Assembly: GCA_964106915.2 (NCBI GenBank)
Contig: OZ066916.1
Source: Podarcis gaigeae
Lineage: Eukaryota
Direction: 5' to 3' (one strand)
Length of the DNA stretch: 64,000 nt
The notes below the pieces were generated by a model, which had not been told where the DNA came from, made no database searches, and saw nothing but the letters and a program-made list of their open reading frames with translations. The translations under genes and the position numbers were made by a program. This document shows positions 7,422 to 40,341 of this stretch, one piece after another. Each line of letters opens with the position of its first letter. Position 1 is the first letter of the stretch.

Positions 7422-8537
7422 ATTTTAAACCAGAAGTGTAACACCAAATATTAAAACACCAGAGCAGCATTGATGGCCCAAGGGCCTCATGAAACAAGAA
7501 TCATTTCAGCCAGGAGTCTGAAGCTTAGCAGAGACGGTGTCTGCCAATTTGTCACCATCACCACTACAGCAGATGTTCCTCTTGCTCTACTCAACAGGGC
7601 AGTTGTTTCCAAGACTGTATGGGAAGGATAAGGAGGCGCCCATCAGCAAGTGGGGATGATAGGGGTCCTCAGTGACAGCAGCTTCTTCCCTTCCTCACTG
7701 GGCAGTTGGGACCAGTGGCCTCTATGACAGGAGAAGAATGGCCCGGTCCACTTAGGGAGAGCCTGTGCCAGGGAAAGAAAGATTTAATCATCTGTGGAAA
7801 TGGCTGAGTAAGAATGCAGCAGATGGAGGAAATTAGAGAGAAATGCAAAGACTTACCTGATATCCACTGGGAGAAACCTGTCAGTCAACCTAGAAGAGAA
7901 CGATCTGTCACTTGAAGCTTGAAGCAAACATGGATGAATGACATCGGTGACCTTGTTCCTGCTCCTTGTTATCTCTTCTCTTACCGTCCTTTGAAAAGTC
8001 TCTAGTCACATATGAAATCCAATGCTCACACGATGTATTCTTATACAGCCCTTAGGGCTGCAACTGGTTCTCTAGTCCATCACAAGGGTACTTAAGAATA
8101 GAGCTCTGTGCCCTCCCACAGCTTCACAGCTTGTAAAGATTTGCTTTCTAAAGCTTTTTCTTTTTCATTCAGGCTACACAGTTACCTGGGAGTAAGTCCC
8201 GCTGAACTCAGTGGGGCTTACTTCTGAGTAGAAAACCATGGGAAACCCAGTAAATTTGTAAGCATGGTCTCTACAACTTCACGGCTCTCTAATCAAGAGC
8301 GCAAAGCTGTAATGAAAACCAAAACAGTCTAATTACAACAGTCAATTCAATTGGAAGGTAAGGCTGGTTAAAAAACAACCTAAATTGATCTGTGTGTTTA
8401 AAATAAAGAGCATTGCTTCTGCTGGAGTATTCCTGCATCCTTTCTGCTATTATAATTTTCTCGTGATGGTAAAAAAATGTATGTTGTAAAGCTTTTATTT
8501 TAAAATGCATATCTTCCTTTTCTTGCGAAATATGCAC

Positions 8538-9063
8538 AATAGGAAGGCCCAACAGAGACTCCATTTCCTCAGGGTCTTGCGAAAGAACAATGTCAAAAAA
8601 AAAAAAAAATGGATGATCTCCTCCTGCCGCTCTACAATAGAAAGTGTCCTTTCATACTGTATTACAGTGTGGTACGCTGGTTTGACAGCCACGGACAGGA
8701 AGTCCCTACAGAGGGTGGTGAATGCAGAACATGATATCATGGGCTGTCCCCTGAGTTCCCTAGATGATTGCCTCAAGAGAGTGAGGAAAATTCTTAGGGA
8801 TGACTCATACCCCGGCCAGCACCTCTTTAATCTCCTACTGTCAGGCAGGAGATACAGAAGTATAGTCAGCCGCAACAACAGGTTAAAGAACAGGCTTTAT
8901 CCGTGGGCTGTTGGGCTGCTGAATGAAAAAAAAAATAGTGGTGCAATTGACTTCCGACAAGCACACAGAGTGCAAACAGGATTGAGTGTATTGGGGGGGG
9001 GGGTCGTTTAATTTCACTGCACACAGGTGGTGTAGTGGCAATAAAGGTTTATTTATTTATTTA
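8538..9063 (+). mobile_element. Rex1/Babar LINE 3' fragment
   Basis: RKAQQRLHFLRVL...IESVLSYCITVWY...LQRVV...LFNLLLSGRRYRS...AVGLLN matches the Rex1-type RT C-terminus; ends AATAAA plus (TTTA)n. Confidence 0.8.
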
Positions 9064-14773: not shown

Positions 14774-14936
14774 AGTTACAGATAGGTAGTCGTGTTGGTC
14801 TGCCATAGTCAAAACAAAAAAAATTCCTTCCAGTAGCACCTTAAAGACCAACTAAGTTAGTTCTTGGTATGAGCTTTCGTGTGCATGCACACGAAAGCTC
14901 ATACCAAGAACTAACTTAGTTGGTCTTTAAGGTGCT
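14774..14936 (-). mobile_element. Penelope-like element pLTR fragment, fold-back copy 1
   Basis: Starts agttacagataggtag... like the copies at 25.2 and 38.8 kb; perfect 102-bp palindrome 14835-14936; direct repeat ctccctacagcagtt at 14763-14777 and 14935-14949. Confidence 0.85.
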
Positions 14937-17900
14937 CCCTACAGCAGTTCTGGAGGGAAGGTACACACACACACACACACACACACAACCCTACCATGAA
15001 ATTCAAGTGCCCCTGTGACTTTGAAGAGGTCAAGTAAGAGACCCATGTCCTCCTACCATGATTTGTGCAAAATCTTTATTGGATCCTTCTTGTCAAACTT
15101 GTCAGGATGATCAGATGCATTTTATGTCCTTTTACTCCTTTCAGATCAAAGTGCATCTATATCACTCTCACTATGACCAAGTACTGTGGTGCAGCAAGTA
15201 AAGTCAACCATTAACTTGAGCTCAGACACTGTAATTTTTCCCTTTGGAGTTCGTCACATGATTTCATCTTTTAAGCTGTTTGTGCCCATTTCATTTCACT
15301 CTATGCCAATTTTTATTTACCTTAATCTATTCTATTCTATTCTATTTTCTTTATTATACACACTTGGATAATGTATATTATGTACTTCTTATTTTGTTTT
15401 CTCATTGCTGGTCATTGACCACAACAATAAAGATTTTACTTAGCAATGCATAAATGGAAACTTGTGCTCCCTGTCCCTGCCCACCTGAGTCTCATTTGAA
15501 GGGAAGGAAGATATGAATCTTGTGAAATGGTCCTCTACCCACTTTGGACAAGACCTGGAAGTGCATGAAAAAGAAGGGGGGAAACATTGTAACTCTGCTC
15601 TGGCTACCTCCTATGAACATTCAAAGCAGCTGTTAGCTTTCAGCCTTAACTACAGCACTTACTAGCTAATTATTTCACCAGATCTCTCTCATGGACTTGT
15701 TGGTTCCCCACTTCCCTTGCTACTGATATAGACCAACTGCAAAGCTGGCACATTGACTGTTTTTGACGGGAACTGGCATTTCACTGCATTATGCTACACA
15801 CATTTGCAAATATGCTATTTATCATCTTGTTTTGCATCTGTGATTACTCTCTTGCTTTTTAATTATAGATTAGTGCAGAGCAAAGCAAATTGCTGGATGG
15901 GACCCAAGGACAAAATATTACTTCTTTTTGGCTTAAGAGAAATTGGATCAGAGACCAGGAGGTGAGCCTTGATTCTCGATAACATTTCCACTCTGGGTGT
16001 TTCATCTTGTTGCTTCTGTGTTGCAATGTAAGCCTTTTAAATCTGTTCAGACTGCATATACCAGCAAAAGAACAGAGGACAGCTGGGAGTTGCCTGGATA
16101 CCTTTACTCCAGGCAAGTGGGTGGGGTTGAAGAACGAGCTATGACATTCTGTGCAAATTGTACTTCCATTTATCAAGGTTTTCAGAATATTCATTCATTT
16201 ACTTAGTTCTTCAAGCTGTTGTAGGATAATCCAAACCCTGGCTGGGAAGTGGTGATGTGTGGTGAAATGGAGAAACCACAATATCTGCAGCCCTGTTGCT
16301 CACACCTGGGAAGGTATGCTGGGGGAAGAAAGGCAAATCACTCCGTCAGCCTGGAGACGGTACAGCCATTGGCCCTGGACGAAGCCCAGTGTTCTCAAGG
16401 GATGGAAGTGGAGTCAGCTGGGATTCAGCAGATCCCTGGCATGGCTCAGCCCATCCTACAGAACAGCCCATTTTGTGGCATTCTGCAAGCTACTACTGGC
16501 AGAGATCCCATTAGCAGTACTTCCACTCACCTGCCCATTTGGTGGGTGGAAAGGGGAGTTGGTACCGCTCTGTGGGCAGAGGTCAGCAGGGCTTGATGAA
16601 CAAAAACTCCCACCCAGTACAGTCCCTCTCAAGCTGGTACAAGAGGCCTTTGGATTGCAGCTTAAGCACCACCCTTCATTGAAAATTTCAGGGTGGATTC
16701 CCCTAAGGTTTCCATAAAACAACAATACAATAACACCAGGGGGAAAATACAATATAAACAGTAAGAAAATACAAATACTAAAAGCTAGGAAACAACAGTA
16801 GTAAATGCTTCAGTTAATAAATGGGTCTTCAGCCAATCAAGATGCCTACCTCACAGCTAGATAGGAGCTGATTCCAAAGGCTGGGAGCCACTACAAAAAG
16901 ATCATTCGTCTAGTTGTCTCCAGATGGATTTGTGTAGGCTGAGGGACAACCAGGAGGGCCTGAGCTAATGATCTCAGTGTATGGGCAAGCCAGAAAAGTA
17001 TTCTCTTGGGTCTTGTGGTTAGATTTAGGAACTTAAGAAAAGCCTGATGGATTAGGCCAGTGGCCCATCTTTCCTCTCCTATGGTTTCAGCAACTGATAG
17101 CATACAGCCTCTGATGGAGGAGATGGGTAAATTTATTAAGGGATAGAAAATACAAGAGAACAGCTGAAAACTCGAAAAGTAATGAACAGAAAATCCAGCT
17201 GGTCTTGCATTACTTTGCAGCCAAAGCCCGGCTCACCAGACATGGTTAAGAAGAGCCAATGCAGCTCAGTGAAGGTTCTTGACAACTGTCAAGGATGTAG
17301 AGACATATTTTTTCAAGAGACAGGTCAAGTGACAGGTTATACTTCCTCAGAAAAAAGTGATGCAGAGCTACAGCAGGCAAAAGCCTGTAGCTGACACAGC
17401 AGGTTTGGCAGCATACACATTGCAGGTTCATAGCACATTGCAGCTCTCAAACGCTTTAGCCATATGTCAAGTGGACACCCAGCCTTACAGAGCTGAACTA
17501 CAGAAGGAGCAACCTTAAGTGCCTTTTCACACATTATGCAGAGGCAAACCCAGGTCTGCAAGGTCAAGAGGGAGCCACAGCCAGTCTTACAGATGTGTGT
17601 ACAATCTACAGTCAAATCGGTGGTGATGTTGCCTGACGTGTGTGCAGGACTGGGCATGGTGCCAAATCCCTAGAAAATGGCAAGGGAGACTTGGAAGCAC
17701 AGCATGGGCATATGGGAGATAATCTAACGTGTGAAAAAGGCACTTAGGGTTGTTATTTCATTTTAAACATGTGTTAACTAACGTTCATTAAGAAAAAGGG
17801 GGAAAGACTACCATGCACCATACCGCATTGATCTCCCCAGTGCCTCACTCTTCTTGGGAAACGGCAGTGACCCACTGTGTTGGGAACCTAGGAAAGCAAT

Positions 17901-25235: not shown

Positions 25236-25432
25236 AGTTACAGATAGGTAGCCGTGTTGGTCTGCCATAGTAAAAAAAAAATAAAAAATCCTTCCAGTAG
25301 CACCTTAAAGACCAACTAAGTCAGTTCTTGGTATGAGCTTTCGTGTGCATGCACACTTCTTCAGAAAGCTCATACCAAGAACTGACTTAGTTGGTCTTTA
25401 AGGTGCTACTGGAAGGAATTTTTTTTTTTGTT
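25236..25432 (-). mobile_element. Penelope-like element pLTR fragment, fold-back copy 2, nested in a decayed MIR/Squam3-like SINE
   Basis: 54-bp perfect inverted arms 25289-25342 and 25364-25417; direct repeat tcaacttaactcaagtta at 25223-25240 and 25433-25450. Confidence 0.85.
25331..25364 (-). ncRNA. Hammerhead core lacking the 5' strand of stem I
   Basis: Minus strand reads CTGAAGA A GTGTGCATGCACAC GAAAGCTC ATAC; the upstream GTAT is replaced by the inversion junction. Confidence 0.6.
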
Positions 25433-37593: not shown

Positions 37594-37729
37594 CAGGCAC
37601 CCCCAAACTCGGCCCTCCAGATGTTTTGGGACTACAATTCCCAACGTCCCTAGCTAACAGGACCAGTGGTCAGGGATGATGGGAATTGCAGTTCCAAAAC
37701 ATCTGGAGGGCTGAGTTTGGGAATGTCCT
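37594..37729. mobile_element. Palindromic hAT (Charlie-like) MITE
   Basis: Long imperfect hairpin (cccaaactcggccctccagatgttttgg ... ccaaaacatctggagggctgagtttggg); relatives at about 28315-28402, 35392-35490, 37940-38048, 41951-42070 and 50177-50265. Confidence 0.75.
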
Positions 37730-38495
37730 TAATATTCCTTTACTTACCACCCCTTTCCTTGGTAACTGACATGTTCAGTTATAGAGGAGGCTACTACGCA
37801 AACACAACACATTCATTCCACTCATCCATCCCATTTTCTGGGAATACTTTCCCGTTCCAAAATGGCACGGGGCTGGAAAGATAAAAGGAGAAGGCACCAA
37901 GCAGAGAGCTGTTCTCAGATGTTAATCTCTCTTGTTGATCTATCTAGATGTTGCTGGACTCCAATGGTCCAACAACCAACCAATGGTCAGGGATGATGGG
38001 AGTGGTAGTTCAGAAACATCTGGAGAGTCACTGGTTCCCCAGCCCTGGTATACAGCATGCAATAACTTCCTCCAGTATATTTTCTCAGCAAAGTGAGTGA
38101 CTTCAGATAAGGGGGAAATAAGCAAAGGAAGAATAGCTTCAAAATAGTACTAAGAAGTTCATCTTTACCACATACTTACTAAAAACCTGAACTGCATTTC
38201 AGCTGAGGCCAGTCAAAGGCACTGAAAAAACAAGCAAATAAACTGAAACACAAGTGATAATGGACATTGGCATACCTTTTAACTGGACAATATGATAAAA
38301 TAAATGCATTATACACATTAACGCTAATCATAACGCAAACTAATGCCATACAAAATAAATCTGTTGTACATTACAATATATGCCCCTTTTTGAGGTTATA
38401 CTTTTTAGTTACTTTTCACTTGCAATAGTCTACTTATTTAGAACAAAAAAAATTCCTTCCAGTAGCACCTTAAAGACCAACTAAGTTAGTTCTTG

Positions 38496-38533
38496 GTATG
38501 AGCTTTCGTGTGCATGCACACTTCTTCAGATAC
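38496..38533 (-). ncRNA. Second, identical hammerhead motif on the opposite strand (inverted arm)
   Basis: Exact reverse complement of 38692-38729. Confidence 0.78.
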
Positions 38534-38604
38534 ACTGAAGAAGTCTTCCTGTAAGACCTATTGCAGTCGTTAAGAGTCGTCAACAGGCTCATCACAGCTA
38601 TCTG

Positions 38605-38691
38605 CCAATCACCCATTCCCACCACCCTTCTGAGTAATACCCCTCCCCACCTTCTCACTATATAGAAGGGTCTGGAAACTTCTGTTTCAGT
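38605..38691 (+). promoter_or_regulatory. Putative Pol II core promoter in the Penelope pLTR
   Basis: CCAAT 38605-38609, C-rich Sp/KLF-like box 38640-38651, TATATAG 38659-38665 and Inr-like TCAGT 38687-38691 (A at 38689, 30 nt after the TATA start). Confidence 0.5.
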
Positions 38692-38729
38692 GTATCTGAA
38701 GAAGTGTGCATGCACACGAAAGCTCATAC
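38692..38729 (+). ncRNA. Minimal type I hammerhead ribozyme motif in Penelope pLTR
   Basis: GTAT (stem I) - CTGAAGA (CUGANGA core) - A - GTGTG CATG CACAC (stem II) - GAAA - GC - TC (cleavage after C38725) - ATAC (stem I'). Stem III is reduced to the palindrome AGCT. Confidence 0.8.
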
Positions 38730-40341
38730 CAAGAACTAACTTAGTTGGTCTTTAAGCTGCTACTGGAAGGAAAATAATTTTTTGTTTTGACTATGGCAGA
38801 CCAACACGGCTACCTATCTGTAACTACTTATTTAGGTTTTGTTTTTACTAGGTTTATTAATTGAATAGAAATTCCCTGTTTTTTTTATGCGTATTTGCTG
38901 CTGATGTTTTAACCCACGTAAACCGCTCAGAGATTTGTTTAAATATAAATATCTATTGCCCCAATAAAAACACAAACAAACAAACAAACAAACAAACAAA
39001 TAAAATAATGAAGTACTCAATATTGTGATATAGATCTCTTCATATGCATCCTTAAAAGAAATTATATGTGGTTACAAATATGATCTGTGGCGCTTTTGAT
39101 ATACGGCGGGGGGCGGCGCAACCAGGGGTTTTGAAAACTGGAAAGAACTAAAAGTATTTTTGGAGGGTGCTTGGGACAACAAGGGGAGGAGCAAAATCTA
39201 CTTCTTTCCTTTTCCATTTGTTGAGGTGTTCACTGGATCAAATTGTATTCCACTCTAAATATCTTTTTTTGCTAAGTACTAAGGGAGTGCAATGAAACTA
39301 TCAGAAATGTCACTACTCCATTTCTACTGCTTTTCTCTTTATCTTCATTAACTTCATTCAATCCATTGCCTGGATTTCCAGTTCAAATTAATATTAGTCA
39401 CCAGAAGACATGTTTGCAAACTGCTTCTCTCTAGGCCTTAATTATTATGCAAACCATCTGGCCTTTTTGCTTGCATTGTTTCCTTTTATGCCTTTTCTTT
39501 ATAACAACATAATTGTCTTTAAAGATCTGTTTCAACATCTTTGAAGCCTGAGCAGGATATCTTTAACAACTTTGAGATCTTATTTAAATATATGCAGAAA
39601 ATTCCATTCCATTTTTAAAATGTGGCCTGGAAATCAGAACTGAAATGTTTTTTAAGAGGTTTAGTTGGCTTCATCCCAATATTTATTTAATAAAATAGTA
39701 TGACCAATGCAGCTCTAAAGGTTGTCTTGGACATTGATATTATGGAATAAAGGATGCCCCATAAAATCAAGAACATCTTGCAGCCCTCCTGTGTCGGGGG
39801 GGGGGGGGAGACATGAACCAAATAATCATCTGGGACAGGGTGATGCTTTAGTAGTATATTCATCCATTTTCATTTCGGTTATAATATTTTTTTCTGTTTC
39901 ATTTCTCTATTTAATTATGTTAGCTCGGTCATATTGGTTTATATCAGGGGTGGGGAACCTCAGGCCCAGGGCTGAATGTGGCCCACAGGAGCACTCAGTC
40001 TGGACCATGGAACATTGCCTAAAATAAAACCCTAACCCTCCTTTAGTCATTTTACTTGGCTAGAAAGTATCCTCGAACTGTGATCCTATCTCTAGCTTGC
40101 CTGAATAGATGATGGAAAATGGCATGTGTGTCTCAGCACATCTCCTTTTACCACATCCACCAGTTGTATGTGGCCCCTGGAAAGTTGCCCATGAGGGAAT
40201 CTGGTCCTCTGGCTAAAAAAAAGGTCTCCCATCCCTACTTTATACAGTGTTGTTTTTTTGTTTTGTTTTGTTTTGTTTTGTCTATTAGCTTTCTTACCTG
40301 CTGGTGTGTTTAAGCTGTTCATTAGGTTAGCTTCTTTGTAT

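What the first reader, a model, noticed from the sequence alone, without database searches (positions are those of the whole stretch)
38442..38825. Two back-to-back minimal hammerhead ribozymes in a young Penelope fold-back insertion
Seen: GTAT-CTGAAGA-A-GTGTGCATGCACAC-GAAA-GCTC-ATAC at 38692-38729 (+) and its exact reverse complement at 38496-38533 (-), inside a 12-bp TSD. Known: Penelope-like elements carry minimal type I hammerheads whose stem III is a short palindrome and which are thought to cleave as dimers. Inference: here both stem II (14-nt perfect palindrome) and stem III (AGCU) are self-complementary, so two RNAs could pair through either helix. There is also an extra A between A9 and G10.1. 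The motif is intact in both arms, consistent with a recently active family.
Basis: partly seen in the sequence, partly recalled or inferred. Interest (0 to 1): 0.8.

Follow-up and report, generated by a model that had tools for sequence, protein, structure and literature searches.

The report
Truncated Penelope insertion with minimal hammerheads
This is a short, fairly recent, broken copy of a Penelope-like jumping gene, pasted in with an upside-down partial copy of itself, so its tiny self-cutting RNA motif appears once on each DNA strand; the layout and the motif type are already described, so it is an ordinary example.

Summary
The 38-nt motif lies at 38692-38729 (+), with its exact reverse complement at 38496-38533 (-). 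Both sit in a 382-bp insert (38442-38823) flanked by a perfect 12-bp target-site duplication.

The motif meets every sequence feature published for Penelope-type minimal hammerheads. These include the "extra A" between A9 and G10.1, which is a conserved hallmark of that class and not an anomaly. A descriptor for the class hit only these two sites in the window and none in 200 shuffles. Rfam's hammerhead models miss the motif.

The insert also has three published Penelope insertion traits:
- 5' truncation;
- an adjacent inverted 5'-truncated copy;
- a 37-40-nt "tail" at one end only.

Two more copies of the family lie in the window, at about 25236-25432 and 14776-14934.

The two hammerheads are on opposite strands, so no single RNA carries both. 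A read-through RNA is predicted to fold into a roughly 100-bp hairpin that buries the motif. The stem II palindrome gives a much more stable RNA duplex (-30.6 kcal/mol) than the helix III dimer (-11.1), but it cannot supply helix III.

The scan already holds 72 notes naming hammerheads and Penelope in this genome. This is a known kind and of low interest.

The parts
38430..38441 (.). Left target-site duplication, CTACTTATTTAG
   Evidence: Exact 12-nt direct repeat with 38824-38835 (family D11).
38442..38539 (-). Inverted 5'-truncated partial copy (left arm). It starts at the proximal 3' end of the unit and lacks the tail.
   Evidence: I1: 98 nt, 94% complementary; one substitution plus differences in the A/T run; alignment.
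38496..38533 (-). Minimal hammerhead motif on the minus strand. Predicted cleavage is after C38500.
   Evidence: Exact reverse complement of the plus-strand motif. Descriptor hit.
38540..38685 (+). Non-coding stretch of the forward copy upstream of the hammerhead (pseudo-LTR part). It carries CCAAT at 38605-38609, TATATAG at 38659-38665 and TCAGTG at 38687-38692.
   Evidence: Stops in all three frames. Motif positions. No second copy of this stretch in the window. Promoter function is inferred only.
38686..38786 (+). Forward arm: hammerhead plus about 60 nt up to the A/T run, where the inverted arm's counterpart ends.
38692..38729 (+). Minimal type I hammerhead. Helix I GUAU/AUAC; CUGAAGA; extra A; helix II GUGUG-CAUG-CACAC; GAAA; helix III A-GC-U; C17 at 38725.
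   Evidence: The monomer MFE keeps helices I and II (-6.8 kcal/mol).
38787..38823 (+). One-sided 3' 'tail' of about 37-40 nt, present on the forward copy only.
   Evidence: Absent from the inverted arms of copies A and B, present in all three forward copies. Matches the published 30-40-bp PLE tail.
38824..38835 (.). Right target-site duplication, CTACTTATTTAG
25236..25432 (-). Copy B of the same family: fold-back with a 15-18-bp TSD. One hammerhead core at 25335-25364 (-) has lost the 5' strand of helix I. The inverted arm stops at G12.
   Evidence: Both arms share a private A-to-G change that copies A and C lack.
14776..14934 (-). Copy C of the same family: perfect fold-back with a 13-15-bp TSD. 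Its axis is the centre of the 14-nt stem II palindrome (14879-14892). It has no CUGAAGA box and so no hammerhead.
   Evidence: arms 51/51 identical.

Best explanation
The 382-bp insert at 38442-38823 is a 5'-truncated copy of a Penelope-like retroelement (PLE) family that is abundant in this genome, which is a lizard according to earlier notes of this scan. It was made by target-primed reverse transcription and left a 12-bp target-site duplication. The forward copy keeps only the last roughly 285 nt of the unit: a non-coding pseudo-LTR stretch with CCAAT and TATA motifs, the hammerhead, about 60 nt more, and the distal 37-40-nt tail. A second, inverted cDNA covers the hammerhead and about 60 nt downstream. 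It starts at the proximal of two alternative 3' ends and was joined head-to-head to the forward copy, which is why the motif appears once on each strand.

The motif is a PLE-type minimal type I hammerhead. In full-length tandem elements, such motifs are thought to cut the element RNA after C17. They do so weakly on their own and better as helix III dimers or with the element's protein.

In this solo fold-back copy only the plus-strand motif sits behind a possible promoter. The minus-strand motif would be made only as part of a read-through RNA that folds into a long hairpin, so it is probably inert.

Shown here: the anatomy, the match to the motif, the family copies and the fold energies. Inferred: two-strand priming, promoter use and cleavage.
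For: Exact motifs, TSD and arms.

All min-HHR features are present, and the descriptor hit only these two sites against 0 in 200 shuffles.

The published PLE insertion layout matches: heavy 5' truncation, an adjacent inverted 5'-truncated copy, and a 30-40-bp tail often at one end only (PMC8557442).

For the Anolis Poseidon_Ac element, the purified protein nicks and extends both DNA strands. Reverse transcription starts at two internal sites whose spacing equals the tail. The hammerhead there cleaves only with protein present (PMC11167929).

The Poseidon_Ac consensus has the same hammerhead architecture but a different sequence, and also has a TATA-like run upstream of it.

Three family copies in the window have TSDs of different lengths (12, 13-15 and 15-18 bp) and different fold-back pivots. 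Both arms of copy B share a private substitution, which points to a single insertion event.
Against: No RT or GIY-YIG ORF lies in the window. The longest ORFs gave no such Pfam hit, and the 146-nt stretch is closed in all frames. Linkage of this particular hammerhead family to an autonomous PLE therefore rests on architecture and on unchecked scan notes.

Rfam's hammerhead covariance models give no hit even at E<=10 on an 81-nt stretch.

The catalytically required helix III dimer is predicted at only -11.1 kcal/mol, against -13.6 for two monomers and -30.6 for the stem II duplex.

For the Anolis element, the authors found no reads ending at the hammerhead site.
Confidence: 0.85

Rival explanations
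1. The family is a short non-autonomous derivative, SINE-like or retrozyme-related. It consists only of the pseudo-LTR/3' module with the hammerhead and is mobilised in trans by an autonomous PLE. On this reading the three copies are not truncated copies of a coding element.
For: All three copies in the window are 160-380 bp, and none touches an ORF. [quoted passage not shown] Earlier follow-ups in this scan call the family a 'mini-retroelement' (unchecked).
Against: Heavy 5' truncation is the norm for autonomous PLEs, so short copies do not discriminate. The three copies have three different 5' ends, as truncation predicts, and not one fixed unit start. Here the hammerheads are inverted and not in tandem, so there is no retrozyme-type unit.
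Confidence: 0.25
2. In this family the hammerhead-like sequence matters mainly at the cDNA or RT level and not as a ribozyme. The stable helix II hairpin or palindrome could stop reverse transcriptase, or could let two same-sense cDNAs anneal. Either would seed the head-to-head insertions.
For: Copy C's fold-back axis is exactly the centre of the 14-nt palindrome. The inverted arms of copies B and C can both be read as ending at G12, the 3' foot of helix II. Copy A's junction lies at a 5-nt inverted repeat, TTCAG/CTGAA (I5). The palindrome duplex is very stable (-30.6 kcal/mol).
Against: There are only three copies. A junction anywhere inside a palindrome looks centred on it, so the coincidence is weaker than it seems. 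Copy B's junction shows only about 1 nt of microhomology. The Poseidon_Ac hammerhead has a non-palindromic loop II, so this cannot be a general PLE feature. A cDNA-level role would not explain why every catalytic core position is kept.
Confidence: 0.15
3. The insert is a fold-back (MITE-like) DNA transposon with terminal inverted repeats, and the hammerhead resemblance is incidental.
For: It has 98-nt inverted arms and a flanking direct repeat.
Against: The arms are not terminal on the right side, where a 37-40-nt unpaired tail follows. TSD length differs between copies (12, 13-15 and 15-18 bp). The arm length and pivot differ in each copy, while the 3' end is constant. The motif meets a specific multi-feature descriptor with 0 hits in 200 shuffles.
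Confidence: 0.02

Closest known systems
Minimal hammerhead ribozymes of metazoan Penelope-like elements (Cervera & de la Pena 2014, PMC4209133)
   Same: CUGANGA and GAAA boxes. One unpaired nucleotide between A9 and G10.1. A G10.1-C11.1 pair. Helix III reduced to A15.1-U16.1 around a palindromic 15.2/16.2 dinucleotide (AGCU). A 4-bp helix I with no defined loop 1. Occurrence as single motifs or as pairs on opposite strands 100-700 bp apart.
   Different: Helix II is 5 bp with a self-complementary CAUG loop, which makes the whole 14 nt a palindrome. The Schistosoma families have 7-8 bp. That paper names turtles and snakes among reptiles, not lizards. This exact sequence was not found in the searchable literature.
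Poseidon_Ac (PAc) of Anolis carolinensis and its protein-assisted hammerhead (Frangieh et al. 2024, PMC11167929)
   Same: Same hammerhead architecture: an extra nucleotide after A9, a palindromic ACGU against AGCU here, and C17. A TATA-like run lies upstream. The 3' ends of insertions fall at two alternative sites roughly 60 and 98 nt past the cleavage site here, against 82-89 nt for the distal site in PAc. The interval between the two sites is the 30-40-bp tail.
   Different: The sequence is unrelated at the motif level. The PAc ORF starts inside helix II, whereas here all three frames close within about 50 nt after the motif. This is therefore another PLE family or a non-coding derivative.
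Generic PLE insertion architecture (Craig et al. 2021, PMC8557442)
   Same: 5' truncation, an inverted 5'-truncated copy adjacent to the 5' end, and a 30-40-bp tail at one end only.
   Different: No ORF or direct pseudo-LTR pair is present. Only the terminal roughly 285 nt of the unit survive.
Animal non-LTR retrozymes (Cervera & de la Pena 2020, PMC7229834; preprint 10.64898/2026.07.22.740005)
   Same: Short non-coding repeats that carry type I hammerheads with a weak helix III and are related to PLE pseudo-LTRs.
   Different: Retrozymes are direct tandem repeats, so two hammerheads lie on one RNA and can excise a circle. Here the two motifs are inverted, so no unit-length RNA is bounded by two sense-strand cleavage sites.

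Membership tests
PLE-type minimal hammerhead (min-HHR) | Catalytic boxes C3-U4-G5-A6-N7-G8-A9 and G12-A13-A14, and a non-G at position 17 | tested here: met
   CUGAAGA ... GAAA ... C17 at 38696-38725.
PLE-type minimal hammerhead (min-HHR) | [quoted passage not shown] | tested here: met
   A at 38703. The descriptor hit needs extra=1. Listed as a conserved feature.
PLE-type minimal hammerhead (min-HHR) | G10.1-C11.1 closing pair, with a helix II longer than the canonical 4 bp | tested here: met
   G38704-C38717. Helix II is 5 bp with a CAUG loop, slightly shorter than the 6-8 bp quoted for other families.
PLE-type minimal hammerhead (min-HHR) | Helix III reduced to A15.1-U16.1 with palindromic 15.2/16.2 | tested here: met
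   AGCU at 38721-38724.
PLE-type minimal hammerhead (min-HHR) | Short helix I (4-5 bp) flanking the core | tested here: met
   GUAU 38692-38695 pairs with AUAC 38726-38729. The monomer MFE keeps it.
PLE-type minimal hammerhead (min-HHR) | Family-wide covariation in helices I and II, with core positions conserved | tested here: inconclusive
   The motif copies in the window are identical, so they carry no information on covariation.
PLE-type minimal hammerhead (min-HHR) | Self-cleavage after position 17, as a dimer or with protein | not testable with these tools
   Only energies are available: monomer -6.8, helix III dimer -11.1, stem II duplex -30.6 kcal/mol.
Canonical type I hammerhead (Rfam hammerhead models) | Covariance-model match with a stable helix III | tested here: not met
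   No hammerhead family was listed at E<=10 on 3.5 kb or on an 81-nt stretch. This is expected for motifs lacking helix III, which needed a special descriptor.
Penelope-like element insertion | Target-site duplication of variable length and 5' truncation | tested here: met
   TSDs of 12, 13-15 and 15-18 bp. Three different 5' ends share one common 3' end.
Penelope-like element insertion | Adjacent inverted 5'-truncated copy, and a 30-40-bp tail at one end only | tested here: met
   The inverted arms lack the last 37-40 nt, which all forward copies carry. Described.
Penelope-like element insertion | RT plus GIY-YIG ORF belonging to the same family | tested here: inconclusive
   No such ORF lies in this window, as expected for truncated copies. 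Family-level linkage is known only from unchecked scan notes. Public collection scans found nothing.
Animal non-LTR retrozyme | Two or more hammerheads in direct tandem on one strand | tested here: not met
   The two motifs are on opposite strands.
Fold-back / MITE DNA transposon | Inverted repeats that reach both termini, and a TSD of fixed length | tested here: not met
   There is an unpaired tail at 38787-38823, and TSD lengths differ between copies.

The most novel reading that the evidence does not exclude
The 14-nt palindrome that forms helix II of this family's hammerhead may also act at the nucleic-acid level during integration. It is the only long self-complementary stretch in the 3' module. 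It could let two same-sense cDNAs, primed from the two nicked target strands, anneal to each other, or it could stall the RT at its foot. Either would set the pivot of the head-to-head insertions that are common for this family. The same palindrome might dimerise the element RNA, as retroviral dimer-initiation hairpins do.
Probability: 0.12. Interest if true: 0.5.

Novelty: new member of a known kind. Interest (0 to 1): 0.18.

Why it matters
It adds little to what is already known. It is a clean example of how Penelope-like elements integrate: a one-sided tail, an inverted partial copy and variable TSDs. It also shows that the 'extra' nucleotide after A9 is part of the class definition. Its modest value is as raw material. 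This family is abundant and young in the genome, so a census of fold-back pivots and 3' ends could test in vivo the two-strand priming and two-start-site model proposed from in vitro work on the Anolis Poseidon element.

Tried and rejected
- Rfam scans on 3.5 kb and on 81 nt at E<=10 listed no hammerhead family. This counts against canonical membership, not against the minimal class.
I replaced it with my own descriptor script.
There is no evidence on expression, transcript starts or cleavage ends, and no family-wide variation profile.
- Exact-pattern scans of metagenome, viral and prokaryotic genome collections with a 23-mer of the motif found nothing.
- A literature search for the motif as DNA or RNA letters found 0 papers. 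Lunse et al. 2017 (PMC5785218) is not held.
- ORFs of at least 130 aa in the window gave no RT or GIY-YIG Pfam hit. The three frames across 38535-38830 are all closed.
- I did not compare the window with the Poseidon_Ac protein. That sequence exists only as text in a supplement and has no reference, so the step was left out.
- I considered and rejected three readings: a chance motif, a fold-back DNA transposon (asymmetric ends, variable TSD), and a retrozyme or circular-RNA unit (the motifs are inverted, not tandem).

Full report
**Observation.** The region was read directly. The 38-nt string at 38692-38729 on the plus strand is identical to the reverse complement of 38496-38533. CTACTTATTTAG occurs at 38430-38441 and again at 38824-38835, bracketing a 382-bp insert. 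Inside the insert, 38442-38539 and 38686-38783 are inverted arms of 98 nt, 94% complementary and 146 nt apart. A gapped alignment shows one substitution between the arms. The remaining differences sit in an A/T run.

**Is it more than chance?** The 30-nt core occurs three times in the window against none in 100 shuffles. That only shows a repeat family. As an independent test I wrote a descriptor for the published minimal hammerhead. It required:
- CUGANGA;
- an optional extra nucleotide;
- G10.1-C11.1;
- helix II of at least 4 bp;
- GAAA;
- palindromic 15.2/16.2;
- U16.1 and a non-G at 17;
- helix I of at least 4 bp.

It found exactly the two reported sites and nothing in 200 dinucleotide shuffles of the window.

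**What the motif is.** Reading 38692-38729 gives:
- helix I: GUAU/AUAC;
- core: CUGAAGA;
- one unpaired A;
- helix II: GUGUG-CAUG-CACAC, closed by G10.1-C11.1;
- GAAA;
- A15.1-G-C-U16.1;
- C17 at 38725.

Cervera & de la Pena 2014 (PMC4209133) defined this class in Penelope-like elements (PLEs). [quoted passage not shown] They also describe a short helix I, a long helix II, and pairs of motifs 100-700 bp apart on opposite strands.

Rfam's hammerhead models do not see the motif even at E<=10 on an 81-nt stretch. That fits a motif without a helix III, and it means the motif should not be filed as a canonical type I hammerhead.

**What the insert is.** BLAST of the insert against the window found two more copies of the same family, which I call B and C, with the insert under study as copy A. 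Aligned with A, all three share the same 3' module: hammerhead region, about 60 nt, an A/T run, then a 37-40-nt tail ending in CTGTA(A). They differ in three respects:
- TSD length: 12 bp in A, 15-18 in B, 13-15 in C.
- How far the forward copy extends 5': A about 285 nt, B from C3/U4 of the core, C from inside helix II.
- Where the inverted arm is joined.

In A and B the inverted arm begins at the A/T run and lacks the tail. Both arms of B share a private A-to-G change that A and C lack, so the two arms of one insertion come from one event.

This is the published PLE insertion layout. Craig et al. 2021 (PMC8557442) describe heavy 5' truncation, an inverted 5'-truncated copy next to the 5' end, and a 30-40-bp tail often at one end only. 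Frangieh et al. 2024 (PMC11167929) worked with the purified Poseidon_Ac protein of Anolis carolinensis. They showed that both target strands are cut and extended, and that reverse transcription starts at two internal sites whose spacing is the tail.

The Poseidon_Ac consensus in their supplement has a hammerhead of the same architecture but a different sequence. It has an extra U after A9, ACGU for helix III, and C17, and its ORF starts inside helix II. Here all three frames close within about 50 nt after the motif, and the 146-nt upstream stretch is non-coding. This is therefore a different PLE family or a non-coding derivative.

No RT or GIY-YIG ORF is in the window. Linkage to an ORF is known to me only from unchecked notes of this scan.

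**How it most likely arose and works.**
- *Shown:* the anatomy above.
- *Inferred from the Anolis in vitro work:* one cDNA was primed on one nicked strand at the distal start site, giving the forward copy with its tail. A second cDNA was primed on the other strand at the proximal start site, giving the inverted arm without a tail. The two were then joined.

Two cDNAs of the same sense can pair only at self-complementary sequence. The evidence from the three junctions is mixed:
- In copy C the axis is exactly the centre of the 14-nt palindrome (14879-14892).
- In copy A the junction lies at a 5-nt inverted repeat, TTCAG/CTGAA.
- In copy B there is about 1 nt of homology.
- The inverted arms of B and C can also both be read as stopping at G12, the foot of the helix II hairpin, which would fit an RT stall.

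Three copies cannot decide between these readings. A junction anywhere within a palindrome looks centred on it.

**The ribozyme in this context.** The monomer folds with helices I and II at -6.8 kcal/mol. The double hammerhead that builds a 4-bp helix III from two AGCU segments, with swapped helices I, evaluates to -11.1 kcal/mol. That is less favourable than two free monomers (-13.6). The minimum-energy dimer is a duplex through the 14-nt palindrome at -30.6 kcal/mol.

The two pairings cross each other in a two-molecule complex, and the stem II duplex does not create a helix III. This agrees with two published findings: low in vitro activity of these motifs even as dimers, and strict protein dependence of the Anolis motif.

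The two motifs here are on opposite strands, so no RNA carries both. A transcript across the whole insert folds into a hairpin of about 100 bp on either strand (-199 and -221 kcal/mol), which would bury the motif.

Only the plus-strand motif has a possible promoter: CCAAT at 38605, TATATAG at 38659 and TCAGTG at 38687. Another first-stage note on the same stretch makes the same point.

**Comparison and novelty.** The motif class, the dimer idea, the opposite-strand pairs, the inverted 5' copy and the tail are all published. What is specific here is the family sequence. It was not found in the searchable literature or in three public collections. Its fully palindromic helix II hairpin is also specific to it.

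The scan already holds 72 notes naming hammerheads and Penelope in this genome. Three earlier follow-ups called comparable inserts ordinary members of a known class, and my own tests lead to the same verdict. I rate it a new member of a known kind, of low interest. The only open thread is whether the palindrome biases where head-to-head copies are joined.

**Limits.** I have no read data and no access to other copies in this genome. 

Noticed in passing
window 37598-37722 and 37979-38025: A 50-nt-arm hairpin (arms 37602-37651 / 37672-37721, 90% complementary) scores 55 and 50 bits on the two strands against Rfam mir-5408, below the gathering score of 90. Part of one arm recurs at 37979-38025 at 87%. 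It looks like a repeat-derived hairpin, not a curated miRNA locus.
   Followed up: no
window 8505-9011 (+): A 168-aa ORF has a short Pfam ALKBH8_N match (E 7.8e-07, residues 13-31). It may be a fragment of another repeat or gene. I did not examine it.
   Followed up: no
window 14961-14984: A (GT)n microsatellite lies about 11 nt from the left TSD of family copy C. PLEs of other clades are reported to favour microsatellites (PMC8557442 abstract). With one case this may be coincidence.
   Followed up: no
window 38968-39003: A (CAAA)n simple repeat lies about 145 nt downstream of the insert.
   Followed up: no
window 38535-38575 versus 38655-38692: The start of the 146-nt middle stretch, read in reverse complement, loosely resembles the stretch just upstream of the forward hammerhead (GGTCT..GGAA.ACTTCT..TCAGTG with indels). 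Either the inverted arm continues in diverged form, or the family's pseudo-LTR has an internal inverted repeat. This cannot be resolved without other copies.
   Followed up: partly
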